From Salpingoeca rosetta (taxonomy: Eukaryota; Protista; Choanoflagellata), in assembly GCA_033442325.1 (NCBI GenBank), contig JAWQFM010000002.1:1272642-1315081 (forward strand): a stretch of 42,440 nucleotides of DNA. Reading direction: 5' to 3'. Positions 1,141 through 39,910 of the stretch are shown piece after piece. A model generated the notes under the pieces. That model saw only the letters and a program-made list of their open reading frames with translations, made no database searches and was not told where the DNA came from. The translations under genes and the position numbers were made by a program. Numbering within the stretch: the stretch's first letter is position 1; the number at the start of each line of letters is the position of its first letter.

Positions 1141-4100
1141 TCAGTAGTCGAGGGCGCATATTAACGCAACGCCCCGCTTGATCCAGTGCCGCTGTGGCTT
1201 GTCGGATGGAATCTCCAGCGGCAGCACAAAGTTGGTCGAGTGCCCGGTCGTCGACAGCGTGCCTGCGCGTTGCAGTGTCTTGTAGCACGGACACACGTAC
1301 ATGCCAGACTCTGGCACCGCGCGGTCTGGCACGGGCTTGAGCCAGATGGGCGCCATGCTCGTGTACAACTCCTTTGGTCGCGACTCGGCCAGCAGGTGCT
1401 CCTCGGCATCCCACCGGGCGCCCTCAAGGAACAGGCCGTAGATGTAGCAGCCATCCTCGGGCCTGTGTCGCCATGGTTGATGGTGAACATCATGGTGAGA
1501 CGCAGTTGTGGTGATGACACGCACAAGCAATGCACACACACACACACACACACACTGCACACACACGCGCAATGCACACACACACACGCCATCACACACA
1601 CACACACAATGCACACACACACAATGCACACACACAATGCACACACACACACACATCCAATCAACCTCCCCCCCCCCCCCCTTCATCTCCACCCCTGTCT
1701 TCATGCCACCCCAACACCACCCCCAAACTGCAAGTAACTCACTTGGTGACAATGTCTTCGTGGGAAATGCGAAGAACCTCAAAGTCAAAGGAGAGAGAGT
1801 CAATGCTGACGACGTGCTTGCGAGCATAGTTCTGAAGCGTGCCGGTCAAGAACGCCTGTGGGAAGTAGAATCCGGAAATCCAGAACGTCACGGGAATACC
1901 GTTGTCGATCCAGTGCTGAATAAACTCGACGCGCCGCAGCAAGTCCTCCACCCATGACGCAAGCGGCTTGAGCGAAGGATAGGCCTTGGCGGACCACATG
2001 TCCGGGACAATGTTGTTGAACAAGCTGTTGGACAGCAGCTCCAGCTCCTCGCTCATGACCACAAGTCCCTTCAGGGCCTTGAGCACATCGTGCAGGGACG
2101 AGTGCATCACAGACAGCAGCCGGTTAAACCGAATCACCTCCTGCACAAGTGAATAAGCAATAACAACAACGAAGATGGTGGGTGGTGTGAGGAATACGAC
2201 AACACGCTTGGTCCACACACTTTCGCACGTGCACACATGAAACGCACATAAACGTACACAAACACACATAAACAAACAACCACACACATGCACACACATC
2301 ACAGCACACATACACACATGCACACACACACGCACACAAAAGCACACACACGCACGCACACAAAAGCACACACATACACACACGCAACGCGCAGGATATG
2401 TGCAAACCTGGATGAGGACGGTGTTCATGGACTCCTCGTAGCGAACAGGGTGCTTGGTTTGCACGTGCTCCACATCCATGGGCTTTGGACAGCGCTTGAG
2501 GATGCTCTCTGCAACTTCCGTGATGACCTTCTCCCGATCGCCAGCACCCTTGCCCCCTTTGCCGCCGCCACTCGTCGCAAGAATGCCTGCAAGCAACTCG
2601 GTCGTCTCGTTGTTGGCAAAGCTGATGTTGGCGTTGTCGTGCAGACCAAAAATCTCCGGGCTGTCGTTGATGGGCAGCGACGCAATGTGCGTGAGGAAGT
2701 CCTCGTAATCCACCGCGTCCGTCTGCTTGTACACGCCAGACGGCGAGAACGCGTGGTCTGGGTCAAGCACGCTCTCGTTGTAAAAGTCCTGCAGAATCGT
2801 CATCTGGCAGCGGCGGTCCCAGTCGTCCGTGACGCGCCCGCCATAGTTGATCTGCCCAGCCGTGTACGTCAGCACCTTGTACGGCGGCGTGTCGTAGTCG
2901 TCCAGGAACATGCGCAGCTGCGTCAGGCAGATGGCCAGGTCGCTCTTGTTGTACGGGTAGCGGATGTTGAAGCCGAGCGAGCCAAACTTGCGCCGCTCAA
3001 GTAGCACGCCGTGGAACAGGCACAACGCAAACAGCAGCCGGCGGTACGATTCCGGCTTGTTGGAGTTGGTGAGGTAGTCGTCGTCAAACGCGTCAAAGGC
3101 CTCCATCAGGTTCGCCTTGATCCCGCGCGGCGGCTCAACCGTCATCTTGGACGAGTTCTGCAGCACCGACACGGGGAACTTGGGGCTGGGGATGCTGGTC
3201 AGCCAGAGCCTAAAGTCGCGGTGCACCTTGGCCGGGTCAATGTTCTCCACCAGCCGCTCCAGCGTCGGCATCCAGCTTGGCGCAAGATGGCAGTTCTGGA
3301 AGAACACCCACGTGCCGCGCTCCGTCGCCGCCTTGAACATGGCCTCCGCCCGCGGGCCCTGGCCCTGCCCGAGCGAGATGGACGCAAGCTTCTTCGTAAA
3401 CTTCATCTCCTCCGCAAACTTGTACAGGTCGGCCGCAGGGTCCGTGCCGCGTGAGAGCACAAACACGAGCGGCACCGTCGCAGACGAGTCCGGGAACACC
3501 ATGGACAGGTTGGTTGTCTGCGGCTCAATGAAGCGCTGCCCGAGGTGGCGCGCAACAAAATCTTGCATCATGGGCGACACCTTGTCCAGGCGCAGGCAGC
3601 GAATGACCAGAATCTTCTGGAAGTCGTCCAGCTCGTCCTGCCAGCGCCCGGGCAGGGGCTCGCGGTGCGGCTCGAGGCTGTCGAAGATGCGCTTGAAGCC
3701 GTCCTCCAGCTCGGCAAACTCCGTGCACAGGCCCGCAAAGCGCGGCAGGTCGGATAGCTGGCGCAGCTCCTTCCAGGCGCGCTCGTTGAGCCAGGACGGG
3801 GCCGGGTTCTCCATCTCGTCGGGGACAATGGAGCTCCCGCTGATGAGGAACCGCCACTCGGCCATGTCAATGCGGTCCTCGTTCATCAGGATGCGCGCGC
3901 ACAGCAGGAACGAGAACAGCAGCTTGTGCTTCTCAAACAGCGACCGGCATACGTTGCGGTACAGGCTGAAGGTGAAGAAGTTGTTGATGTTCTCGATGCG
4001 CTGGTCCAGCTCGTCTGCGGGCTCCGACTTCTCAATGCCCGCCAGGAAGAGGTTGCGGAACCACTCCAGCGAGTACTGGTACATCGGGTCCACGTGCGCA

Positions 4101-7100
4101 AGGTCCGTCGTGCAGAAGAACAGAATCTGCGTGCGCACGGCGACGGGCACGTACTTGCTTCTCGTCTCGTCAATGTCGCGCTCCGTCTCCTCCGCCACCT
4201 GCACCTTGGCCGTGATCTCCTGCGACTTGGCCTTGGACGCGTCCAGCGTGTTGATCAGCTCCTCGTCGTCCACGGGCGACCCCTTGGACTCGCTCAGCAT
4301 CTTCAGAATGCGGCTCTCAATCTCAGCCAGCTCCTGCTTCATCTTGGCGTTCTGGATGATGAGCGCATTCTTCGCCTCCTCCAAGTCCGGGCGCTCCTTG
4401 GCCACAACAAGGCCAAGCATCTGGTCCTCAAGCCCGCTCGGCGAGAGCGTGAAGTTGATGATGGTCACCTTTGTCGACACCTCGGGCGTGTACACCGGGT
4501 TGGGCAGCTTCGTGGTGATGTAGAACTTGAAGTCGTCGTGGTACGGGATGGTGGAGTCGCCCAGCTTGATCACCAGGCTGCCGGCCTGCTTAAACGTCTG
4601 GCGCAGCAGGATGGGCTCCAGCGCAGGGTCAAGCTCCTCCCCAACGTTCTCCAGCAGACACGGGTTGCCGAAGCGAACCGCGTTCTCGAGGCTGCGCAAA
4701 AAGTCGCGGTCTGTCAGCTTCATGGTCACCAGCTTCTCCGCCTCCATCTCCTTGATCCACTTGTTCGCCTGCGCCTGCGGGTCGATGAACAGCGGCCAGC
4801 GCTGCGAGAACTTCACCACGCACGCGTTCTCCGTGGACATGGCGTCGTTGGGCAGCCCGTGGATCTGCCAGTCACGCAGCTCCAAGGGGTCGCTCAGCGT
4901 CGACACGAGGTCCGCGCCCTCAGTGTGCGGCACGTTCAGGGCGGCAAGGTCTTCGCGCCACTGCGCCGTCAGCGCGCTGCGGTACTCGCTCGTAAATGGG
5001 CCCAGGTAGGCAACCGTGCCCGCAGACACGACGACGTCGCCCACCACGTTGACGACCAGCTTGTCGCTGCGCTCCACAGACTCCTTCCAGCGCACCTTCT
5101 CGTCGCCCAGGAGCGAGATGAGCTTCTCCGCGCGCTGCAGCTTGAGCGAGCACTCCTCCGCCTTGTCCTCCAGCTGCTGCTTCTTCGTCACCATGGCCTC
5201 GTACTTGGCCTGCATCTCCGCAATGCGGTCGTTCACCTCCTTGAGGCGCGCCTTGGCGTTGTCCAGCTGCGCCATGGTGATGGCCAGCTCCTCCTTGGCC
5301 TGCGCCAGGCGCTGCCGCTTCGGCTCCACGTTCTTCGCCACGTGGTGGTACTTGTGCATGGCGCGCACCCACTTGCAGATGGACGTGCACGCGCGCGACG
5401 ATTTCTCCACGGCCTGCGGCGTGAAGTTCTCGTTGGTCATGTACGGCTCGATGCGCGCGATAATCTTCTCCGGGATGTTGTCCTTGTCAAAGTTGAACAG
5501 CGAATCCAGGAACTTCTGCGGGTTTTGCAGCAGCGGCAGGCTTGCCGACCAGTAGTCGTCCACCTTCTCGCCCACCTTGGTGCCGGCAACCTTCTTCGGC
5601 TTCACGCCAAACATGATGCACACGGCCTCCATCACCAGCCGCACGCCGGCTGGCGGCTTCTGCATGGCCTTGACCTCCGTGATGTCGTTCTTGTTGAGCG
5701 ACTTGAGGCTGGCCACGGCCGCGTCCAGGGCCGGCAGCGCCTCGTTCAGGTCGCGCTGCGCGTCGTCCGCAATCTCCTGCGTCTCCTGCGCCTTTGCGTT
5801 GGCCTCGGCCTCCTCCTTGCCAACCTGCTTGGCCGTCTCCTCCGCAATCTTGGTGTCCTCGGCAATCTTCTTCATGGTGGCCTCCGTCTCCTCCTTGGCC
5901 TCTTTGAGCATGGGCTGCATCTGCCGCAGCTCCTCCTGCAGCTTCGCCACTTCGTCCGCCGTCTCCAGCAGCTTGTCCAGGCCAACCGCCGTGCGGTTCC
6001 TGCTCTCCAGCAGCGACTTGCGCTTCTGCCCAAGCATCTTGGAGAAGATGCCCAAGAGGTCCAGGTAGCTGGTGGGCGTGACAAAGTTGACGCGGCCAAG
6101 CTCCGCCTCAAACTGCGCAGACTTGTTGAGCACGGACTGCTGCACATTGACGCAGGCGGTGACCAGGCCGTCCACCAGCGCGTCGTCGTGGTGCAGCTCG
6201 GGCAGGTCGTTCATAAAGTACGTCGCCACAGAGCGCAGCGCCTGCTCTGGCCACGCGCTGAACCAGTCAATCGTGCAGCAGTTGACGAGCGCCGGGAACT
6301 GGCGCAGCCGCGAGCGGAACACCTCGCCAATCGGCGACATGCACACCACGCAGTGGATGTTGCGCCGCACGCGCCTGCAGTACGCAGTCATGAAGTTTGT
6401 CTTAGTGGGCGCCTGCCCCGCCGCCTGCACGACGGGCTTCATGGCGGTGAAGATCTCGTCCTGCTCCGACGGGTCGTAGATGCCCGGCACGTCGCCGCTG
6501 TTCAGGATGTTGTTCAGGTCCTCCAGGAAGCTCTCGTCCTTGATCTGCGTGTCGCTGAAGAGGAACACCACCTGCTGGTCCTGCAGGCCAGCCTTCTTCA
6601 GCACCGTGCGCAGGTCCTCCCGCCACTCCGGTAGGCCGTAGTTCTTCGACAGCTCAATCTGGAAGCACTCAAAGTCCGCCATGAACGCCGCCAGGCGCGT
6701 CATGCTCTGGCGCCCGGAGCCGCCCACGCCGAGGCACAGCGCGTTGCCGAGAGGCTGGCGGATGATGCGGCTGATGCGGCAGGCGTGCTCAATGGCGTCC
6801 TCGAACAGCACCAGCTTCATGCGCGCCGTGGTGGAGCTGTTGTAGTCCTCCAGCGCCTCGTCCATGACAGCCTTGATCTTCTCCAGGCCAGGCAGCTCCT
6901 TGTACTTGCGGTTGTCCGCAGAGCCGTCCATAAAGTCGCCATACAGCACGGGCTCGCGTGCAACGACGTCACCCCACTCGAGCGAGAACGTCTCTGTGAC
7001 GCGCCCGCGGGTGAGGGAGTTGAACCACTCGCGGTCCTCGTCGTTGATGAGGCGGTCGCGAAACACGCGCCGGCACTCGTGCGTCCACAGGCGAATCACG

Positions 7101-10100
7101 TCTGGCGTCTCGCGGAGCGTGCCCACGTCGTTCATCAGCATGCCCTGGAACACCTTGGCCAGGTCGCGCAGGTTGAACGTGTAGTGCACCTTGGCCGGCG
7201 TGGGCAGGAGCTCGCGCGTGATGGTGTCGTACACGCCAATGGTGGTGCGCACAAGCTCGGCGGCCAGGTTCTCTGCCAGGCCCTCCGTCTGCCGCAAGTA
7301 CGCGTCGAGGATGGGCTCGAAGATGGTTGCCTTCTCGCTCGAGCTCATCTCCGTGAAGGCGAGGAAGTTGAAGTGGCGCGTGAACCGCTGCGTGATTGGG
7401 TTGCGGCCGCCGCCGGGCGGGCCCATGGCGCACACAAACGTCATGTCCACGAGCTTGCGGAAGGCGCCAATGTTCTTGCGGTCGTACCAGCCACCGTGGT
7501 CTTGCCACTGGCGCAGCAGCTCAATCGGTGGCTGGGCGCCGTACTCCTCCTTGGCGGGCATGTTCAGGTCGTCAACAAAGAACACAAACTGCTTGCCGAG
7601 CGGCGGGCCGAAGATGCCCTTGCGGCGCTTGTCCAGCTTTGCATCAATCATGTCCTGTGTCTGGTTGGCGGACGTCCGCGCGGAGAAGGCAATAAAGTGC
7701 GCAATGTACTGCGAGGGCATGGAGTGCAGCAGCTTCGTGCTCACCGTGAGCGTCTTGGCCGTACCCGTGCGGCCGACAACCAGCAGCGGCTTGGAGGCCA
7801 CAACCAGCTTCTCCACCAGGTACGAGTAGCGCATCGTGTCCACCGTCGGCACGATGATGCTGGAGAACTCGTCCTTGGGGTTGACGGTGAAGTCTGGCAG
7901 GTATGTTGACCAGAGCACCCAGTGCAAGTCACCATCGCCGCCAGCAGCGGCGTCGCTGTCCTCGTCGTGGTCGCCCTCGTCCTCTTCCTCCTCGCCCGCA
8001 GCGAATGCGCCGTCGTTGCTGAGGCGGTAGTCGTACACGGTACCGTCGTCCGGGAAGGGCATGCTGGCGCCAGCGCTGGCCATGGTCTCGCGCAGCCAGG
8101 AGTCGAAGATGGCGCGGCCAGACTCGTCGCAGGACGCACCAACGGACCAGATGAGCGAGAAGATGAACCACGGCTCAATCATGGTGGGCAGCATGTCCAG
8201 GCGGTTGGCGGGGATCTCAAAGCCCTCCTTGCGGACGTAGGGCCGGAAGAAGCAGTCCAGCATCTTCATGAGGCTCACGGCCAGCTGCGAGTCGACGGTG
8301 GTGACCACCTCCTTGGTCTGGCGCCGCACCACGTGGATGGCAGGCTCCATGTATGTGGAGAAGAGGGAGCGCAGCTGGTCCGAGAACGGCTTGATGTCCT
8401 CGGGCAGGGCGCTCTGCAGCCACGAATCCACAAACGGCTGCAGGCCGAGGATGGACGGCTCGAGGTAGACCATGCCACAGCGCGACACCGTGGCCGGGGA
8501 GGCGACGGTCAGGTCCTCCACCTCGAACATCATGGTCATGGTCGGGGTGAGGGCGATAATCTCGCCAGAGGCAAGGCAGAGCTTCTTGTTGTCGTCGAGC
8601 ACGGTGTTCATGTTCTCGATCCAGATGGCATCGACGGGCCCATCAAACACAAACCAGCGCTTGTGGTCGTCGTCTGCCGCGACGCCCTGGCGAATCAGCG
8701 TGGACAGGATGCCGTCGGTCCACTCGTGGGTCATCTCGTCGAAAGCGCCGTACAGCTGGCCCATGGTGATGGACTTGGGGTTGAGCACGTTCGGGTGCAC
8801 GGGCGTGTACAAGGCGCCCGAGTCTGCGCGCTCGCCCTGCAGCGACGTTAGCGCATCGGCCAGCACCTCGTAGCAGCGCGTCTTGCCGGAGCCCGTGGGC
8901 CCAACAAGCATGAGGCCGTGGCGCACAACGGTGGTCTCGTACAGCTGGATGACCTTGGTGACAAAGCCATCGACCGGCTGCAGGTCGTGCTTGCGGCACG
9001 TGTCGCGGATGGCGACTTCCAGCGCGCCGTAGTCCACGTCGGGCTGCTTCGTCTGCGGGAAGAGATCCGACACAATGCCGTTGAAGAGGACAAGGTCGTC
9101 CACCAGGAACTTGGGCACGTTGACGTCGCGGATGGCGCGCAGCACAATCACATCCTCAGGCATGTCTGGGAAGGCGCGCTTGAGGTTGCCTGCAGCGCTA
9201 ATGACCGTCTTGACAGCACGCATGCCGAAATCGTAGTGGTCCTGGGAAGACAGCTGCTCCGAGGACAGCTTGAAGACGGTGGTGATCTTGCGCGCGAGGG
9301 ACTTGGCGTTGTCGAACCCAAATGAGTAGAGCATAATCTCTGCAATCATGGCGTAGTCTGGCACCATCATGGCGACGGGGCGGAAGAGGGCAGCGAGGTT
9401 GTCTGGCAGCTCGGTGCGGCCGGCGTAGCCGGGGTTCATGGTGATGAAGGGCGCACACGTCCAGCGCAGCGAGAGCTCCACGCCCTCGAACCAGAAGCGC
9501 TTGTCGCGGTTGCGGATGGCTTGCTGGATGGTGGACACCTGCTGTGCCACGACAGAGAGCACCTCAATGTCGATGCGGTTGAACTCGTCGAAGCACGCCC
9601 AGGCGCCGGAGGAGGCGAGGCCCTTGAAGAACTTGCCCATGGCCTGGTAGTCCAGCTGGTCGGAGCAGTTGAAGACGACGCATTGGACGCTGAGCGCCTT
9701 GGCCAGATCCTTGGTCGTCTCCGTCTTACCGGTGCCGGCGGGGCCAGCGGGCGCACCGCCATACACGAGAGCAAGGGCGCCCGTCAGGGTGAGGTAGCAG
9801 CGATCCGTGAGCGGGGTGATGACCAGGCGGCCAGAGTTGCCCAGGTACTCGTAGCCGTAGTTGAAAACGGCGTTGACGGCCTTGATGTGCAGGTCCTCGC
9901 CCTGCGGACGCTCGTCCTCCTCCCAGTAGTAGCGCAGCTGCGAGATCCACTCAAAGTCGCTCACGCGCCCGACACTCAGGTTCTTGATGTTGCCCATGAC
10001 GTCCTTGGCGTGCACCTCAATGACAATGAGGGCGGAGATGACCTTGCGCTTGATGCGGTCGAGCTTGCCGCGGATGAGGGCCACGAGGTCCAGCAGCTGC

Positions 10101-13100
10101 TTCTGCATGTTGGCGTATGCCTTCTCCAGGCCGCTGGGCCCGCCCAGGATGGCCTCCTCCACCTGCGCCGTCCACATGGCCTGGCAGCACGCAATCACAA
10201 TCTGGCCCGGCCAGTCAAGCACAAACTGGGTGCGCTCCGTGTCGGCGTAGCTCTTGAGGGCCTCGTGGAAGATGCTGCGCAGGCTGACCACCATGACGCG
10301 CTCCACCTCCAGCAGCCAGTCTTCCACGTTGCCCTTGGGGTACAGTTCCTCCTTGAACTCGACGCTCTCGCCGTCGCTCGAGTTGAAGCGCGACATGCGC
10401 AGGTCGTCCTCGAAGGTGAGCCGCGCAATGTTGTCGAAGCACTTGCGCATGTGCGGCTGCACCGCTGTCGGGTCCTTGGTCTGCGAGAGAATCTCGAGCA
10501 GCTCCTCGTCGGCGAGGAAGTAGAAGCGCGGGAACACGCCCCGCTTCGTCTCCAGGTACGCGCTCAGGCCCTTCTGCACCTGGTCCAGCAGCTTGTTGCA
10601 CTCGCGGAACGTCTCCAGCAGGTGCTGATCAGAGCAGAAGCTGATGACGCTTGGGTTGCGCTGGGCAGCGTCCATGGAGCGACGCCACATGTAGTCCACC
10701 TTCTGGTAGCGCTTCGACTCTGTGGGCAGCTGCCGCTGGATGTCCTCGGAGCTGAAGATGGGCTCGAGGTAGAGCCAGTTGCGCTGGCACACCGTCCATT
10801 CCTCAAGCACGTCCTGGGTGACACGCAGCTTGTTCTCCCATGTGGCGATGCGGTCCTCAAACGCCTTCTTGTAGGGCGAGAAGGACATGGCTTGCGTCAT
10901 GACAATGTGGTCATCCAGCAGCTGCGCGCTCTCCTCTGCAGACTTCATGATGCACGTGCCCGTCTCCTTGTAGGGCATAATCTCCAGCTGAATCGGCGCC
11001 CACTCGGCCTCCATCTTGTCCAGCGCTTGCTCAATGCCGTACTCCTTGCCCGCAATCTCGCCAACCTGTCAATGTACGTGGGTAGGTTTGGGGGGTTGTG
11101 TGGTGGATTAAGTGAGAGTATAGTTGTGGGAGTGGGTGTGGGACGGTTGGGGGTGGGAGGAGTGGGGAAGCAGAGCGAGGCGAGCGAAGGCGAGCACGCA
11201 GACATGGACAGAGACAAAGACAAAGACAGAGACAGAGACAAGGACAGAGACATAAAGAAACTGGCTCATCTAGACGTGCAGCAGCATCACAGCACACACA
11301 CACATACGCACATGCATGCACACGCATGCACATGTAGGGGCGCCCAGGCCAAACACGCTGCACACCTTTGTGATGACGTCCATGTACTTGTCAAGCTGCA
11401 GCTGCAGAACCTTCTTGAAGGTGAATCCTGCGCTCGGCTTGACGTCAAAGCCAAGGTGTTCGGAGAGCTTGGTCCAGTGCCGCTCGCGCATGCCGGGGTT
11501 GCGCAGGGCTTGGATCAGCGGTGCATATGGCTTGAACTCCTCAATCCATCCGCGCACCGTCTCGGCGACCTTGAGGCAGCCAGGCACGTCCCTGAAGGCC
11601 TTGAGGCACTTGTTGATGGTCTTTGACGCGCTGTTGATCTGCGTCTCCATCGCCTCGGGATCAAGCTCAGAGAAGTTGTCGTGCATCCACACCTACAATG
11701 TGTGCCGGTGTGGTGTTGGCGAGGGGATGGGGTGTGGAATATGGAATGTGGGTGTGGGAATGGTGAGTGTGTGATGGGATGGGTGGGAATGGGTGAGTGT
11801 GCGAATGGTGAGTGTGAAGTGGGTGTGATGTGTAGGACGGATTGTGATGTGTGGGTCGAATTGTGGTGTGTTGGAGATGTGTGCGAAGGTCGTGTTGTGT
11901 GCGGATGCCGCGCCGTGTGTGATGGCTAGCTTCGTGTTGAACGTGCAGAACAAGTGCGACAAGGGACAGGAAGGGACAGGGGTGCATCTCAAACATCAAC
12001 ACATGCAGTACACGAGCCGCCAAGGATAAAAACATAAAAGCATCGATAAACGCGTTTGGCGGCACCCGCACCTTGTGGGACTTGAGCCATTCGTCGGTGG
12101 TGAGCCAGAGGTTCTTGAAGGGCTCAAAGTCTTTGACGCAGCGGTTGAGGTGCTCGTAGTCTGTGACGGGCAGGTTGCACAGCCGCTCCCTGTTGTTGTA
12201 CTTGGTGGCCAGCTCCTGGCTCTCCTTGAGTGCCTTGGCAATCTTGCGCACCTCCACGGCAACGTGCTCCGTCTTCTTGATGTCCTGGTGCTGCGCAAAG
12301 CCGGCCACAATCATCTGCAGGCTGGCCACGTTCTCGGCAAACTCCTTCTGGTCCGTGCCGAGGTTGTCGATGAAGCGCTCCTGGTCCGAGTCCAGCACCT
12401 CCCGCGTGTTGTGCAGCTGCTCTGCAATCTTCTTGGGCCACCCGTACACGTCCCAGCGCAGGGCAAAGTCGCTGTCGGAGAGGCTGACGTTGAAGGCTTC
12501 CAGGAGGTCCCACTCTGCGAGCGTGCGCTTGATGTTTCCTTCCAGGGACTTGACCGTCTCCGGCACCGTCTTCATAAACTCGCGCTGGTCCATGAGCTCC
12601 TCGATGCCGTTTGGCCGCGAGAAGAGCACCTGCGCCATGCGGTTGAACTGGCCCGTGATCTCCGACGCCTGCGTTCGCAGTTTCGTGCACAGCAGCTCCA
12701 GCAGCGCGTCCGAGAGCTTCTTGCACTTGGCCATGAGCTTGCCGCGCAGCTCGATGCACGACACGTGGAAGATGCCAATGTCCACCGAGTTTGGAATCTC
12801 CTTGCCGATGCGCTCGCGCGCGCGCATGTGCTTCTCGCACTCCTTCTTGACGTCGTTGGCGTCGCGGTCGTCGGCCATAAACTCCTCCAGGTAGGACGCC
12901 ACGTCCAGATCAACCAGCTCGCGGTAGCGCTCGTACATGCGCAGGTACGACTCCAGCGGGCGAATGCAGCGCGAGATGTTCTCCGTCACGCTGTCGCGCA
13001 GCTCGCACACCCAGGGCTCCTGCTTGTTGACGGACTCCAGCGTGGGTGTGCCCACCCAGAAGAGGTGTGTCATGATGAGGGGCTCAATGTCGAGCATGTT

Positions 13101-24875: not shown

Positions 24876-25266
24876 TTGTGTGTGTGTGTGTGGATGCAGC
24901 AGTGTCGCAGGGTGCAAGCTGAAGAGTTGAGGTGTTGGCTGGGTGAGCACATGCAGTACCGCAGTAGCCTGCAGCACGCATCGCGTAGATGGCCAAATGC
25001 AAGAATGCACAGAGGCACAGTGCACAAGCAGGAAGTCTAGAAGTCTGTGCACTGCAGGATGCCACAGCTCTACAGCTCGGTAGTGCTTCGGCTCTTCTTT
25101 CTTCTCTGCTTCTCCGCTTTCTGTTCCTTGTGCTTGTGCTTGCGCTTGCGCTTCTTCTGCTTCCGCTAGCTCTCTTCCTCTCCCCCTTGTCCTCCTGTCG
25201 GCCCTGTGACCGACCCGGCTTTTCAGTTTACAGTCTTCGCTGCGCAGGAAGTTGGATGTTGAATGC

Positions 25267-25791
25267 ATGCGATACTAGGGACAGGGATGCTGTGCTGTGC
25301 AAGCAGTCGCAGTCGGTGGCGTGAGAACAGTGATGCACACACACGGAGGGTGGAAAAAAAATGTATGCGATACTAGCTGTGCTGTGCAAGCAGTCGCAGT
25401 GGTGGTGCAGAGCAGCACACACATACACGCACACACAGGGCGTTCAGAAAAAAAATGAATGCGATACTAGCTGTGCTGTGCAAGCAGTCGCAGTGGTGGT
25501 GCAGAGCAGCACACACATACACACACACACAGAGCGAGGAGAAAAAAATGAATGCGATACTAGCTGTGTTGTGCAAGCAGTCGCAGTGGTGGTGCAGAGC
25601 AGCACACACATACACGCACACACAGAGCGTTCAGAAAGAAAAAAAATGTATGCGATACTAGCTGTGCTGTGCAAGCAGTCGCAGTGGTGGTGAAGAGGAG
25701 CACACACGAAGCAGCACACACAGAGCGTGGAGAAAAAAAATGAATGCGATACTAGAGACAGGGTTGCTGGAGGAAGAACAGTGATGCAGAG

Positions 25792-25861
<70 letters not shown>

Positions 25862-25891
25862 CGAGGAGAAAAAAAATGAATGCGATACTAG
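25267..25891 (-). repeat. tRNA-linked tandem array of seven CTAGTATCGCAT anchors, ~93-98-bp period (left copy)
   Basis: ATGCGATACTAG occurs on + at about 25267, 25365, 25459, 25552, 25650, 25745 and 25880, mostly preceded by A-runs. Confidence 0.9.
25869..25876 (-). terminator. RNA polymerase III terminator (T8) of the left permuted tRNA
   Basis: A8 on +, 9 nt past position A37 of the 5' half on the - strand. Confidence 0.7.
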
Positions 25892-25969
25892 ACCGGCGCT
25901 ATAACCAACTAAGCCACGAGCCCCAATCAGGTGAGGGCCCGGTGAGATTCGAACTCACGGCCTCCGGTT
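25886..25969 (-). tRNA. Circularly permuted tRNA-Thr(AGT), left copy: 3' half 25969-25934, 10-nt spacer, 5' half 25923-25886
   Basis: Exact reverse complement of 38667-38750. Confidence 0.85.
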
Positions 25970-27044
25970 TTCTGTGTATCTTCAACCCGTAACCTTGCGG
26001 CTACCGGGGTTTTCTTGTTGTTGTGTGGTGGAAAATTGGCCATTTCAAAATTGCAGGTGGAGAAGGAGCGGGCTTTGTTGTTCTCGCGCCAACATTCTGC
26101 TTGCTTCTTGTGACTTGTGAGAGAATAAGAGCTTAAGAGGCGAGGAGGATGAACACAGGGCAACAGAACTCGTGAACCGTACGAGCGTAGGGCTAGGCTG
26201 TCTCCTCTCAGAAGCATCCACCCAGGTCTCCAATGTGCTGCAAACCAAGCAACCAACCACCAACCACCACAATCACCGCACACAACCGCAAGGGGGAAAG
26301 AACCCACGTCAAAGGCACACCATCATGATGCCACGTAGGCATGTGACTCTCTGACTCTTGTGACTGGAGAGCTGTCTTCTCTTGCTGTCTTGCTGTGATG
26401 TGGTCAGTCAGCGTAGCAGCTTGGCTTGAAGGCAGGCTTGGGCTTGGGGTGAACCTGCAGGAGTGAAGGTCTGAAGGTGCGTTCTAGCTGCTGCCACACG
26501 GCTGCCTGGCTGCTGCCCTTGACGTGTGCTTGAGTGTTTTCCCTTTGTTTCATCCCCTTCAAAGAATATCCCTTCTATTATGCTACGGTGGCTGTCACAC
26601 AGGCCTCAAGGCACTGCTGGCACCAGACAAACAAACAAGCATGATCACTTCATGCAACAGAAACAAGGCTCCTGCTCGCTTGCTTGGACTGGGGAAGAAG
26701 TGAAGAAGTGAGTGCGCGAGGAACAAGCATGTGCTGTCGTGACCTGCACTGTCCTAGTGCCTTAGTGCTAGTACCCAGTACTTGGTGTCTCCAATGATGG
26801 CAACCACGCGGTGTTGTTGTTGAGATGACAACAGCCCACTAGCGCGCGACCTGCCTACACAGCTCTCTCTCTCCCTAGTGAAGACTTTCCTGCCGCCAAC
26901 GAACACGTACGACAGCAAAACCTCGACTACAACTCCGACACAACCGAAAGCGAAACAACAGCAGTCTTGCTTGCTTGCTCGACAACAAATTCCCCTGCCA
27001 CACGCAGCACACAAGCCTGCACATCGGCACACACGAAGAGGAAG

Positions 27045-37667: not shown

Positions 37668-38666
37668 CCGTCAAGCGAAGAAGGAACAAGATTCTCCTTG
37701 CGTGTGCGTGTGTGCGTGTGCGTGTGTGTGTTTAGGTTGTGCATATGGCTCATGCTTGTTTGAGGCTGACGTTTCTTCTTTTTCTTGCTCTTCTTGGCTT
37801 CTTTCTTGTTGTTCTTGGCTTCTGGTCTCCTTGCTCATCGCTGTGATTGGTAAGCCGCTGTAGCCCACATGACGTTGATGTCAGTCTCTCCACGTCCTTC
37901 CCTTCCTTTCCGTTCCTCGCGCACTCACTTCTTCACTTCTTCCCCAGTCCAAGCAAGCGAGCAGGAGCCTTGTTCCTGTTGCATGAAGTGATCATGCTTG
38001 TTTGTTTGTCTGGTGCCAGCAGTGCCTTGAGGCCTGTGTGACAGCCACCGTAGCATAATAGAAGGGATATTCTTTGAAGGGGATGAAACAAAGGGAAAAC
38101 ACTCAAGCACACGTCAAGGGCAGCAGCCAGGCAGCCGTGTGGCAGCAGCTAGAACGCACCTTCAGACCTTCACTCCTGCAGGTTCACCCCAAGCCCAAGC
38201 CTGCCTTCAAGCCAAGCTGCTACGCTGACTGACCACATCACAGCAAGACAGCAAGAGAAGACAGCTCTCCAGTCACAAGAGTCAGAGAGTCACATGCCTA
38301 CGTGGCATCATGATGGTGTGCCTTTGACGTGGGTTCTTTCCCCCTTGCGGTTGTGTGCGGTGATTGTGGTGGTTGGTGGTTGGTTGCTTGGTTTGCAGCA
38401 CATTGGAGACCTGGGTGGATGCTTCTGAGAGGAGACAGCCTAGCCCTACGCTCGTACGGTTCACGAGTTCTGTTGCCCTGTGTTCATCCTCCTCGCCTCT
38501 TAAGCTCTTATTCTCTCACAAGTCACAAGAAGCAAGCAGAATGTTGGCGCGAGAACAACAAAGCCCGCTCCTTCTCCACCTGCAATTTTGAAATGGCCAA
38601 TTTTCCACCACACAACAACAAGAAAACCCCGGTAGCCGCAAGGTTACGGGTTGAAGATACACAGAA

Positions 38667-38750
38667 AACCGGAGGCCGTGAGTTCGAATCTCACCGGGCC
38701 CTCACCTGATTGGGGCTCGTGGCTTAGTTGGTTATAGCGCCGGTCTAGTA
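38667..38750 (+). tRNA. Circularly permuted tRNA-Thr(AGT), right copy: 3' half 38667-38702 (positions 38-73), spacer CACCTGATTG, 5' half 38713-38750 (positions 1-37)
   Basis: Joining 5'+3' gives GGGCTCGTGGCTTAGTTGGTTATAGCGCCGGTCTAGTA|AACCGGAGGCCGTGAGTTCGAATCTCACCGGGCCCT. Acceptor stem GGGCTCG/CGGGCCC, D-stem GCT/AGC, anticodon stem CCGGT/ACCGG with loop CT-AGT-AA, T-stem GTGAG/CTCAC with loop TTCGAAT, discriminator T73. Confidence 0.87.
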
Positions 38751-38774
38751 TCGCATTCATTTTTTTTCTCCTCG

Positions 38775-38838
<64 letters not shown>

Positions 38839-39363
38839 CTCTGCATCACTGTTCTTCCTCCAGCAACCCTGTCTCTAGTATCGCATTCATTTTTTTTCTC
38901 CACGCTCTGTGTGTGCTGCTTCGTGTGTGCTCCTCTTCACCACCACTGCGACTGCTTGCACAGCACAGCTAGTATCGCATACATTTTTTTTCTTTCTGAA
39001 CGCTCTGTGTGTGCGTGTATGTGTGTGCTGCTCTGCACCACCACTGCGACTGCTTGCACAACACAGCTAGTATCGCATTCATTTTTTTCTCCTCGCTCTG
39101 TGTGTGTGTGTATGTGTGTGCTGCTCTGCACCACCACTGCGACTGCTTGCACAGCACAGCTAGTATCGCATTCATTTTTTTTCTGAACGCCCTGTGTGTG
39201 CGTGTATGTGTGTGCTGCTCTGCACCACCACTGCGACTGCTTGCACAGCACAGCTAGTATCGCATACATTTTTTTTCCACCCTCCGTGTGTGTGCATCAC
39301 TGTTCTCACGCCACCGACTGCGACTGCTTGCACAGCACAGCATCCCTGTCCCTAGTATCGCAT
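38745..39363 (+). repeat. tRNA-linked tandem array of seven CTAGTATCGCAT anchors (right copy)
   Basis: Anchors at 38745, 38875, 38969, 39067, 39160, 39254 and 39352; spacings 130, 94, 98, 93, 94 and 98 bp. Confidence 0.9.
38760..38767 (+). terminator. RNA polymerase III terminator (T8) of the right permuted tRNA
   Basis: TTTTTTTT 9 nt after A37. Confidence 0.7.
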
Positions 39364-39910
39364 GCATTCAACATCCAACTTCCTGCGCAGCGAAGACTGT
39401 AAACTGAAAAGCCGGGTCGGTCACAGGGCCGACAGGAGGACAAGGGGGAGAGGAAGAGAGCTAGCGGAAGCAGAAGAAGCGCAAGCGCAAGCACAAGCAC
39501 AAGGAACAGAAAGCGGAGAAGCAGAGAAGAAAGAAGAGCCGAAGCACTACCGAGCTGTAGAGCTGTGGCATCCTGCAGTGCACAGACTTCTAGACTTCCT
39601 GCTTGTGCACTGTGCCTCTGTGCATTCTTGCATTTGGCCATCTACGCGATGCGTGCTGCAGGCTACTGCGGTACTGCATGTGCTCACCCAGCCAACACCT
39701 CAACTCTTCAGCTTGCACCCTGCGACACTGCTGCCTCTTTCTCTCTCTCTCTCTCTCACAAGCGCACAAGCACACACACACACACACACGCACACACACA
39801 CACACACACAGACACACAGACACACACACACACACAGACACACACAGAGACACACACACACACAAAGCCATTTTTCGAATTTCCCGCCACCATCACCTGC
39901 ACCACCCCAG

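What the first reader, a model, noticed from the sequence alone, without database searches (positions are those of the whole stretch)
38652..38759. Leader and trailer of the permuted tRNA pair to build a splicing-endonuclease substrate
Seen: leader TGAAGATACACAGAA|A38 and trailer C32-T-A-G-T-A37|TCGCATTCA are complementary. C32 pairs with the G three nt before A38, leaving a 3-nt AAA bulge at the 3' cut site. T33 pairs with A(-4), GTATC pairs with GATAC, and after a GCA bulge TTCA pairs with TGAA. Established: the pair between pyrimidine 32 and the antepenultimate intron purine (A-I pair), with the 3-nt bulge, is the eukaryotic TSEN 3'-splice-site signature. Inference: this complementarity between non-tRNA flanks argues for a processed RNA rather than a random rearrangement.
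Basis: partly seen in the sequence, partly recalled or inferred. Interest (0 to 1): 0.8.

Follow-up and report, generated by a model that had tools for sequence, protein, structure and literature searches.

The report
Paired flanks of permuted tRNA-Thr
A choanoflagellate genome writes its main threonine tRNA gene back to front, and the two flanks pair so that the 3' cut site sits in the bulge-plus-base-pair that animal-type tRNA splicing enzymes need. Only that local geometry exceeds chance, not the overall complementarity, and cleavage itself is not shown.

Summary
The stretch is a complete circularly permuted tRNA-Thr(AGU) gene with its junction at 37/38: leader, 3' half, 10-nt linker, 5' half, 9-nt trailer, T8. 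The joined halves give a clean Thr(AGU) cloverleaf. With that cloverleaf imposed, C32:G(-3) and U33:A(-4) form beside a 3-nt AAA bulge that holds the 3' cut site, followed by a 5-bp GUAUC/GAUAC helix. About 1% of shuffled or random leaders reach this anticodon-intron pair geometry. The overall flank stability is no better than shuffles. The 5' cut site lies inside the helix, so this is not a bulge-helix-bulge motif.

The stronger case for a processed RNA comes from elsewhere. The dynein gene in the window places the genome in choanoflagellates, probably Salpingoeca rosetta. Published tRNAscan tables list no tRNA-Thr(AGU) for S. rosetta or Monosiga brevicollis, although ACC is a major codon. 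RNA-seq reads cover the gene on one strand from about 38640. A diverged second version keeps the pairing.

No splice-junction reads and no orthologs were obtained. Permuted tRNA genes were known only from algae and one archaeon. The first-stage scan had already noted this gene, on this same stretch.

The parts
38640..38666 (+). Leader of the primary transcript. The segment that pairs is 38652-38664: G(-3) = 38664, A(-4) = 38663, GAUAC = 38656-38660.
   Evidence: RNA-seq coverage in run X30 begins in bin 38637-38647, with no reads further upstream in three runs. Pairs come from the constrained fold.
38665..38667 (+). 3-nt AAA bulge holding the predicted 3' cut site (between 38666 and 38667 = A38).
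   Evidence: P(unpaired) is 0.98-1.00 with the cloverleaf enforced.
38667..38702 (+). 3' half of tRNA-Thr(AGU), positions 38-73: anticodon-stem 3' strand, variable loop, T arm with a B-box-like GAGTTCGAATCTC, acceptor 3' strand, discriminator.
   Evidence: Sequence reading. ARAGORN on the joined halves. Rfam tRNA model hit on the T arm.
38703..38712 (+). 10-nt intervening sequence that closes the acceptor stem as a loop. It has no run of four or more T.
   Evidence: A second version seen in RNA reads has TT inserted after 38706.
38713..38750 (+). 5' half of tRNA-Thr(AGU), positions 1-37: acceptor 5' strand, D arm with an A-box-like TGGCTTAGTTGG, anticodon-stem 5' strand, C32 U33 A34 G35 U36 A37.
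38751..38759 (+). Trailer. U+1 and C+2 complete the 5-bp helix with the leader. G+3 C+4 A+5 are bulged. UUCA (+6..+9) can pair with UGAA of the leader.
38760..38767 (+). T8 run, the first run of four or more T after the leader. Predicted RNA polymerase III terminator.
   Evidence: Some reads continue past it.
25869..25984 (-). Identical twin of the whole gene (leader to T8) in the other arm of a 1.83-kb perfect inverted repeat.
38745..39363 (+). Tandem array of about 94-bp units. The first unit is the anticodon loop, trailer and T8 of the gene. The block CTAGTATCGCAT is invariant in all 7 units, and homology to the gene starts at C32.

Best explanation
This is the transcription unit of a functional type-II (junction 37/38) circularly permuted tRNA-Thr(AGU) gene of a choanoflagellate.

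Shown here:
- The order is leader, 3' half, 10-nt linker, 5' half, trailer, T8.
- The joined halves form a canonical Thr(AGU) cloverleaf.
- RNA of the gene's strand starts about 27 nt before A38 and contains both halves.
- With the tRNA body folded, leader and trailer extend the anticodon stem. C32:G(-3) and U33:A(-4) close a 3-nt AAA bulge that carries the 3' cut site, followed by a 5-bp GUAUC/GAUAC helix.

Inferred:
1. The tRNA splicing endonuclease docks on the mature body, whose acceptor stem is closed by the linker loop. It cuts after A37 by distance and before A38 with the help of the A-I pair.
2. An RtcB-type ligase joins A37 to A38, giving a circular intermediate.
3. RNase P and tRNase Z remove the 10-nt loop, CCA is added, and A34 is deaminated to inosine.

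The 5-bp helix would have to open for the 5' cut. Its likely role is to hold the two ends together and stabilise the two-pair A-I helix.
For: - ARAGORN calls the joined halves tRNA-Thr(agt) with a regular cloverleaf. It finds nothing in the unrearranged window.
- The break points are exactly 37/38 on both halves. The linker has no terminator, and T8 lies 9 nt after A37.
- The A-I pair has P = 0.80, the bulge is unpaired at P > 0.98, and about 1% of random or shuffled leaders do as well.
- A second version seen in RNA reads has three changed leader positions and TT added in the linker. It still offers GAUAC, shifted 2 nt, and has P(A-I) = 0.74. Only 4.8% of random 6-nt replacements would keep a 5-bp match.
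- All laid RNA-seq reads are in one orientation. None lies upstream of 38637.
- Published tRNAscan-SE tables list Thr(TGT) x3 and Thr(CGT) x2 but no Thr(AGT) for S. rosetta, and none for M. brevicollis. The authors note threonine as the exception in both (PMC6188563).
- ACC plus ACT make up 63 of 172 Thr codons in the window's dynein ORF.
- The same tables list many intron-length tRNA genes, so the splicing machinery is present.
- The pathway is established for algal permuted genes (PMC3978253).
- Human TSEN needs the mature domain plus the A-I pair (PMC8479045).
- The Rfam model of YrlA, a natural permuted-tRNA-like fold, matches 38651-38763 at E = 2.5e-4.
Against: - No read joins A37 to A38, and no circular junction was seen. 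The libraries were ordinary RNA-seq at a depth of about 20 or less.
- Several reads run through T8.
- In runs X28 and X29 the coverage starts only at about 38681.
- Overall leader-trailer stability is no better than shuffles, and the MFE fold does not recover the cloverleaf.
- The 5' cut site is buried in a helix, so there is no bulge-helix-bulge.
- The two genomic copies are identical, and the second version may differ by a simple 2-nt slip, so there is no true covariation.
- The trailer belongs to a minisatellite.
- No ortholog was found.
- The species assignment is inferred, not read from a record.
Confidence: 0.6

Rival explanations
1. The gene is a functional permuted tRNA, but only the single A-I pair with its bulge matters. 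The longer GAUAC/GUAUC and UGAA/UUCA complementarity would then be chance, or a fading relic of an ancestral intron whose two ends became leader and trailer when a tandem duplicate lost its outer halves.
For: - Flank stability is not better than shuffled leaders.
- A 5-bp match between a 27-nt leader and the 15-nt target is expected by chance in roughly one case in five (own estimate from the counts used).
- The helix buries the 5' cut site, which is the opposite of what a cleavage signal should do.
- Human TSEN needs only the mature domain and the A-I pair (PMC8479045).
- The tandem-duplication origin model is published (PMC3978253).
Against: - Without the neighbouring helix, the two-pair A-I stem would rarely form. 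Random leaders give a mean P of 0.016-0.03.
- The second version keeps GAUAC despite three changed positions.
- The two RNA ends need some duplex to stay together for ligation.
Confidence: 0.25
2. The locus is a dead by-product of rearrangement. Two tRNA-Thr fragments were brought together next to an expanding minisatellite, are transcribed only as noise or as part of longer transcripts, and yield no tRNA.
For: - The trailer is part of a 94-bp array.
- Reads run through T8, and some start inside the gene.
- No junction reads were seen.
- The locus sits in a perfect 1.8-kb inverted duplication.
Against: - Both halves are intact and break at exactly 37/38. The linker is only 10 nt and has no terminator.
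- No relics of the missing outer halves exist.
- At least two sequence versions keep identical halves.
- The organism otherwise lacks a detectable tRNA for ACC/ACU.
Confidence: 0.08
3. The RNA is a stable tRNA mimic of the YrlA / Y-RNA-like kind, with a closed acceptor hairpin and paired 5' and 3' ends. It would act as such and never be converted to a tRNA.
For: The Rfam YrlA model matches 38651-38763 end to end at 28.5 bits, E = 2.5e-4. YrlA RNAs are described as resembling circularly permuted tRNAs (bioRxiv 10.1101/312249).
Against: - The score is far below the family's gathering score of 69.
- The match sits in the tRNA-like core, while the outer stem columns are mostly non-canonical.
- YrlA is bacterial and linked to Rsr.
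- A mimic has no reason to keep a perfect 7-nt Thr anticodon loop split exactly at 37/38 together with the missing isoacceptor's anticodon.
Confidence: 0.03

Closest known systems
Type-II (37/38) circularly permuted tRNA genes of Cyanidioschyzon merolae, including its tRNA-Thr(AGT) (Soma et al. 2007; Table 1 of PMC3978253)
   Same: The 3' half lies upstream of the 5' half on one strand. The intervening sequence is short (10 bp here, 7-74 there). There is no terminator in the linker, a T-stretch after the 5' half and no encoded CCA. Leader and trailer pair at the junction. Even the isoacceptor is the same.
   Different: The host is a heterotrophic holozoan, not an alga. The junction structure is not the bulge-helix-bulge drawn for the algal genes. 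No TATA-like element was recognised upstream. The circular intermediate is not shown here.
Permuted tRNA genes of Ostreococcus and Micromonas and of the Bigelowiella natans nucleomorph (Maruyama et al. 2010, as summarised in PMC3978253 and PMC13578239)
   Same: Almost all are type II, with intervening sequences of 5-64 bp.
   Different: Those encode mostly Ser, Leu, Cys and iMet tRNAs, and none is Thr(AGU). They belong to a green algal lineage.
Canonical intron-containing eukaryotic pre-tRNA as substrate of TSEN (PMC8479045)
   Same: The mature domain is intact. The cut sites are after 37 and before 38. Pyrimidine 32 pairs with a purine 3 nt before the 3' cut, and the 3' cut lies in a 3-nt bulge.
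   Different: The 'intron' is open: its 5' part is the trailer and its 3' part is the leader. The acceptor stem is closed by a loop. Ligating the exon ends gives a circle instead of a linear tRNA.
Archaeal bulge-helix-bulge motif
   Same: Two 3-nt bulges on opposite strands exist (AAA, and GCA at +3..+5).
   Different: The bulges are separated by 7 pairs plus an internal loop instead of 4 bp. The GCA bulge does not contain the 37/38 cut site. The defining geometry was tested and not met.
Metazoan tRNA intronic circular RNAs (PMC6614914, title and abstract only)
   Same: The same enzymes in the animal lineage turn a TSEN product into a circle.
   Different: There the intron is circularised. Here it would be the tRNA body.
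Bacterial YrlA (Rfam RF02553)
   Same: The order is T arm, closed acceptor hairpin, D arm, with a stem made of the 5' and 3' ends. There is a sub-threshold model match.
   Different: YrlA has a Ro-binding stem and no anticodon loop halves. The score is far below the family's threshold.

Membership tests
Circularly permuted tRNA gene, type II | 3' half upstream of the 5' half on the same strand, separated by a short intervening sequence | tested here: met
   38667-38702, then a 10-nt linker, then 38713-38750.
Circularly permuted tRNA gene, type II | Joined halves give a canonical cloverleaf with the junction at 37/38 | tested here: met
   ARAGORN calls tRNA-Thr(agt) with a 7-nt anticodon loop CUAGUAA. 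The cut could equally be 36/37 with -1, because A37 and A(-1) are the same letter.
Circularly permuted tRNA gene, type II | No terminator in the linker, and a T-stretch downstream of the 5' half | tested here: met
   The only run of four or more T after the leader is T8 at 38760-38767.
Circularly permuted tRNA gene, type II | Transcribed as one linear precursor containing leader, both halves and trailer | tested here: inconclusive
   One-strand RNA-seq reads of run X30 run from about 38640 across both halves and the trailer. Depth is about 20 or less, reads run on past T8, and the start lies at about 38681 in X28 and X29.
Circularly permuted tRNA gene, type II | Circular intermediate and mature joined tRNA exist | tested here: inconclusive
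   No joints appear among 54 laid reads. The libraries are unsuited to tRNA. A proper test needs tRNA-seq or divergent-primer RT-PCR.
Circularly permuted tRNA gene, type II | Supplies an isoacceptor otherwise missing from the gene set | tested here: met
   Tables S4a and S4b of PMC6188563 list no Thr(AGT) for S. rosetta or M. brevicollis. This depends on the inferred species or clade.
Eukaryotic TSEN substrate | Intact mature domain for docking and distance measurement | tested here: met
   The cloverleaf is complete and the acceptor stem is closed by a 10-nt loop. The effect of the loop on binding is not testable here.
Eukaryotic TSEN substrate | [quoted passage not shown] | tested here: met
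   C38745:G38664 has P = 0.80, and about 1% of null leaders reach it.
Eukaryotic TSEN substrate | 3' splice site in a 3-nt bulge next to the anticodon stem | tested here: met
   A38665-A38667 are unpaired with P of 0.98 or more.
Eukaryotic TSEN substrate | 5' splice site accessible (single-stranded) | tested here: not met
   A37 and U+1 are paired with P = 0.99 in the constrained ensemble. The helix is short and A-U rich, so it could open.
Eukaryotic TSEN substrate | Actual cleavage at both sites | not testable with these tools
   This needs an enzyme assay.
Strict bulge-helix-bulge (hBHBh') motif | Two 3-nt bulges on opposite strands separated by a 4-bp helix, each holding a cut site | tested here: not met
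   In register 32-35 / -3..-6, only two of four pairs form (A34 faces C, G35 faces A). The bulges are 7 pairs apart.
YrlA (RF02553) | Score at or above the Rfam gathering threshold | tested here: not met
   28.5 bits against a threshold of 69.

The most novel reading that the evidence does not exclude
Choanoflagellates, the closest living relatives of animals, make their essential ACC/ACU-reading tRNA-Thr(AGU) only from circularly permuted genes. This may be true of both S. rosetta and M. brevicollis, and so may date back to their common ancestor. It would mean that an animal-type TSEN and RtcB ligase routinely process a precursor through a circular tRNA intermediate. They would use an A-I pair and bulge built from leader and trailer rather than an archaeal-type bulge-helix-bulge. 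This would be the first permuted tRNA gene outside algae and archaea.
Probability: 0.5. Interest if true: 0.8.

Novelty: new member of a known kind. Interest (0 to 1): 0.6.

Why it matters
Permuted tRNA genes have been treated as an oddity of a few tiny algae and one archaeon. Reviews up to 2026 still list only those (PMC3978253, PMC13578239).

- **A new lineage.** A working copy in a choanoflagellate would show that the arrangement also arose, or persisted, on the animal side of the eukaryotic tree.
- **A published anomaly explained.** Threonine is the one amino acid whose major tRNA gene does not fit the optimal codon in both sequenced choanoflagellates (PMC6188563).
- **A gap in annotation.** Standard tRNA annotation would be missing an essential gene.
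- **A usable natural substrate.** S. rosetta is genetically tractable. The gene would allow tests of how a holozoan TSEN picks its sites when the 'intron' is open-ended, and of how RNase P and tRNase Z open a closed acceptor loop.

The leader-trailer pairing itself is an expected property of such genes. What is specific here is that it follows the eukaryotic A-I/bulge rule and not the bulge-helix-bulge rule.

Tried and rejected
- **Standard detectors on the native sequence.** ARAGORN and Rfam at gathering thresholds found nothing, as expected for a permuted gene.
- **Unconstrained folding.** It does not recover the tRNA body and gives weak z-scores. I therefore used folds with the cloverleaf enforced.
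- **Total energy as a test of flank complementarity.** Not significant. Shuffled leaders find other partners, so I replaced it with the probability of the A-I pair.
- **Orthologs in metagenomes.** One metagenome scan with a pattern bridging the T loop, linker and D arm gave 16 loci. All were ordinary closely spaced tRNA genes of microbes or giant viruses, and none was permuted. None looked like human DNA.
- **Orthologs in viral contigs.** The same pattern gave two giant-virus tRNA clusters.
- **Synteny.** The M. brevicollis DNAH1 locus with 10-kb flanks holds no permuted Thr gene.
- **Spurious ORFs laid over the gene, used as handles to reach paralogous or orthologous loci.** The 126-aa ORF found nothing. 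The 38-aa ORF found one meaningless hit. The 611-aa ORF is not on record.
- **Relics of lost outer halves near the gene.** None.
- **The loose end of three reads as a possible splice joint.** Its letters are absent from the window, so I take it for a second genomic version and not a joint.
- **Earlier scan notes by sequence and words.** They gave only notes on this same stretch.
- **Assembly artefact.** Rejected. The stretch is held whole by 17 runs of several studies and by one contig without differences.

Full report
**Anatomy**

On the + strand the order is as follows.

| Element | Coordinates |
|---|---|
| Leader | about 38640-38666 |
| tRNA positions 38-73 (3' half) | 38667-38702 |
| Linker (10 nt) | 38703-38712 |
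| tRNA positions 1-37 (5' half) | 38713-38750 |
| Trailer (9 nt) | 38751-38759 |
| T8 | 38760-38767 |

- ARAGORN and Rfam at curated thresholds see nothing in the native order.
- When the 5' half is placed before the 3' half, ARAGORN returns a regular tRNA-Thr(agt). It has a 7-bp acceptor stem, D and T arms, a 5-bp anticodon stem and the loop CUAGUAA.
- T8 is the first run of four or more T after the leader.
- An identical copy lies on the minus strand at 25869-25984. It sits inside a perfect 1.83-kb inverted repeat, 24893-26724 against 37912-39737. The two copies therefore give no independent information.
- A permissive Rfam scan matches the whole unit (38651-38763) to YrlA at 28.5 bits, E = 2.5e-4. 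YrlA is a bacterial RNA described as resembling a circularly permuted tRNA. I read this as independent recognition of the permuted architecture, not as family membership, because the gathering score is 69.

**The observation**

With the cloverleaf enforced, the minimum-energy structure contains:
- G38664:C32 and A38663:U33;
- a 1x2 internal loop;
- the 5-bp helix 38656-38660 / 38748-38752;
- a weak outer helix.

In the ensemble, the A-I pair has probability 0.80 and the AAA bulge is unpaired at 0.98 or more. The 5-bp helix has probability 0.98-0.99.

**Is it more than chance?**

- By total energy, no. 62% of shuffled leaders and 72% of random genomic 27-mers give an equal or lower constrained energy. 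Unconstrained folds have z-scores of -1.1 and -1.5.
- By the feature that matters mechanistically, yes, moderately. A C32:G(-3) pair with P >= 0.80 beside the bulge is reached by 0.7% of random genomic leaders and 1.1% of shuffles. I chose this test after seeing the structure, so I treat it as suggestive.

**What does not fit a textbook substrate**

- In the register of a bulge-helix-bulge motif, positions 34 and 35 face C and A, so the 4-bp central helix is absent.
- The two 3-nt bulges (AAA, and GCA at +3..+5) are seven pairs apart.
- The predicted 5' cut, A37|U+1, lies in the middle of the 5-bp helix.
- For a eukaryotic enzyme this may not be fatal. Human TSEN recognises mainly the mature domain. 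The only preserved intron feature is the pair between the pyrimidine 6 nt before the 5' site (position 32) and a purine 3 nt before the 3' site, and that pair is required for the 3' cut (PMC8479045).

**A second natural version**

RNA-seq raw reads of three runs were laid on 38450-38777.
- All laid reads have the first mate on the minus strand. In most stranded libraries this means RNA of the gene's strand. I could not verify the library protocol.
- No read lies upstream of 38637.
- Run X30 is mostly identical to the window and starts at about 38640.
- Runs X28 and X29 carry TT after 38706 in all reads that cover it (4/4 and 7/7, against 4/18 in X30). Their coverage starts at about 38681.
- Three X30 reads show another leader upstream of 38661. 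Its 19 letters are not in the window.
- Taken together, this is a second genomic version. It has the same halves and trailer, a 12-nt linker, and three changed positions at -10..-5.
- The second version still contains GAUAC, two positions closer to the cut. It gives a nearly continuous helix with A34 bulged and P(A-I) = 0.74.
- Only 4.8% of random replacements of that 6-nt block keep a 5-bp match. A simple 2-nt slip would keep it trivially, so this is weak support.
- No read joins A37 to A38 and no circular junction was seen. Several reads run on past T8. These libraries are not suited to tRNA.

**Whose genome, and why the gene is probably needed**

- The 3091-aa ORF at 1739-11014 is an axonemal dynein heavy chain 1.
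- Its closest named relative is Monosiga brevicollis at 81% identity, and animal orthologs follow at about 70%. The window's G+C content is 0.562.
- The stretch is held by many DNA and RNA runs of one species label from 2010 to 2026.
- I infer a choanoflagellate, most probably Salpingoeca rosetta. The name itself was not read from any record.
- Southworth et al. 2018 ran tRNAscan-SE on S. rosetta, M. brevicollis and Capsaspora. Their table lists Thr(TGT) x3 and Thr(CGT) x2 for S. rosetta, and no Thr(AGT).
- The first whole-word 'AGT' entries in the file are in the Capsaspora table. The M. brevicollis rows that I read show only Thr(CGT).
- The main text singles out threonine in both choanoflagellates as the amino acid whose major tRNA gene does not fit the optimal codon.
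- ACC and ACU need an A34/I34 tRNA. They are 63 of 172 Thr codons in the dynein ORF.
- The same tables list many tRNA genes of intron-containing length, so endonuclease and ligase are in use.

**Comparison with what is known**

- The review of permuted tRNA genes lists 34 genes in C. merolae, Ostreococcus, Micromonas, the B. natans nucleomorph and Thermofilum pendens (PMC3978253).
- Type II (37/38) is the commonest type. Intervening sequences are 1-74 bp, a T-stretch follows the 5' half, and leader and trailer are predicted to pair in a BHB-like motif.
- The pathway it describes is junction cleavage, circular intermediate, RNase P and tRNase Z, then CCA addition.
- A 2026 review still names only algae among eukaryotes.
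- No paper in the searchable library couples permuted tRNA with choanoflagellates or holozoans. Subscription journals are not covered.

**Verdict**

It is carried by the A-I pair and bulge, not by the full complementarity, and cleavage is untested.
- The larger point is that this is very likely a working permuted tRNA gene in the sister group of animals. I file it as a new member of a known kind.
- Covariation could not be tested, because no ortholog could be reached with the collections at hand.

Noticed in passing
window 38745-39363 (mirror copy about 25270-25891): A tandem array of about 94 bp has as its first unit the gene's anticodon loop, trailer and T8. Homology to the gene starts exactly at C32. 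The block CTAGTATCGCAT is invariant in all seven units, although units 2 and 7 have a different upstream sequence and unit 7 lacks the T-run. It may act as repeated back-up terminators, or it may be a recombination-prone gene end. It remains unexplained.
   Followed up: partly
window 24893-26724 and 37912-39737: A perfect 1.83-kb inverted repeat, differing only in (TG)n length, places the two permuted genes facing outward around a segment of about 11 kb that holds a Roc-COR (Roco) gene.
   Followed up: partly
window 38625-38652: A stable hairpin with a GCAA loop (-14.1 kcal/mol, z = -2.7) abuts the leader. RNA-seq coverage seems to start inside its 3' strand, so it may lie at or before the transcription start.
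   Followed up: partly
window 38681-38777, as seen in RNA runs X28-X30: Two sequence versions of the gene (with and without TT after 38706) are very unequally represented between runs of one study. The TT version's coverage begins only at about 38681, inside the T arm. The cause could be a different start site, a processing product or a reverse-transcription stop.
   Followed up: no
window 38651-38763: A sub-threshold Rfam hit to bacterial YrlA (28.5 bits, E = 2.5e-4) arises because YrlA has the architecture of a permuted tRNA.
   Followed up: yes
window 1739-11014, minus strand: The C-terminal 3091 residues of an axonemal dynein heavy chain 1 ortholog are encoded in a single uninterrupted ORF. 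It is 81% identical to M. brevicollis over the first 500 residues.
   Followed up: partly
L018 7916-8163 (also L019, L006): Giant-virus contigs carry tightly packed ordinary tRNA genes. ARAGORN calls one of them tRNA-Ser with the unusual anticodon ACT, beside Thr(AGT) and Thr(TGT).
   Followed up: no
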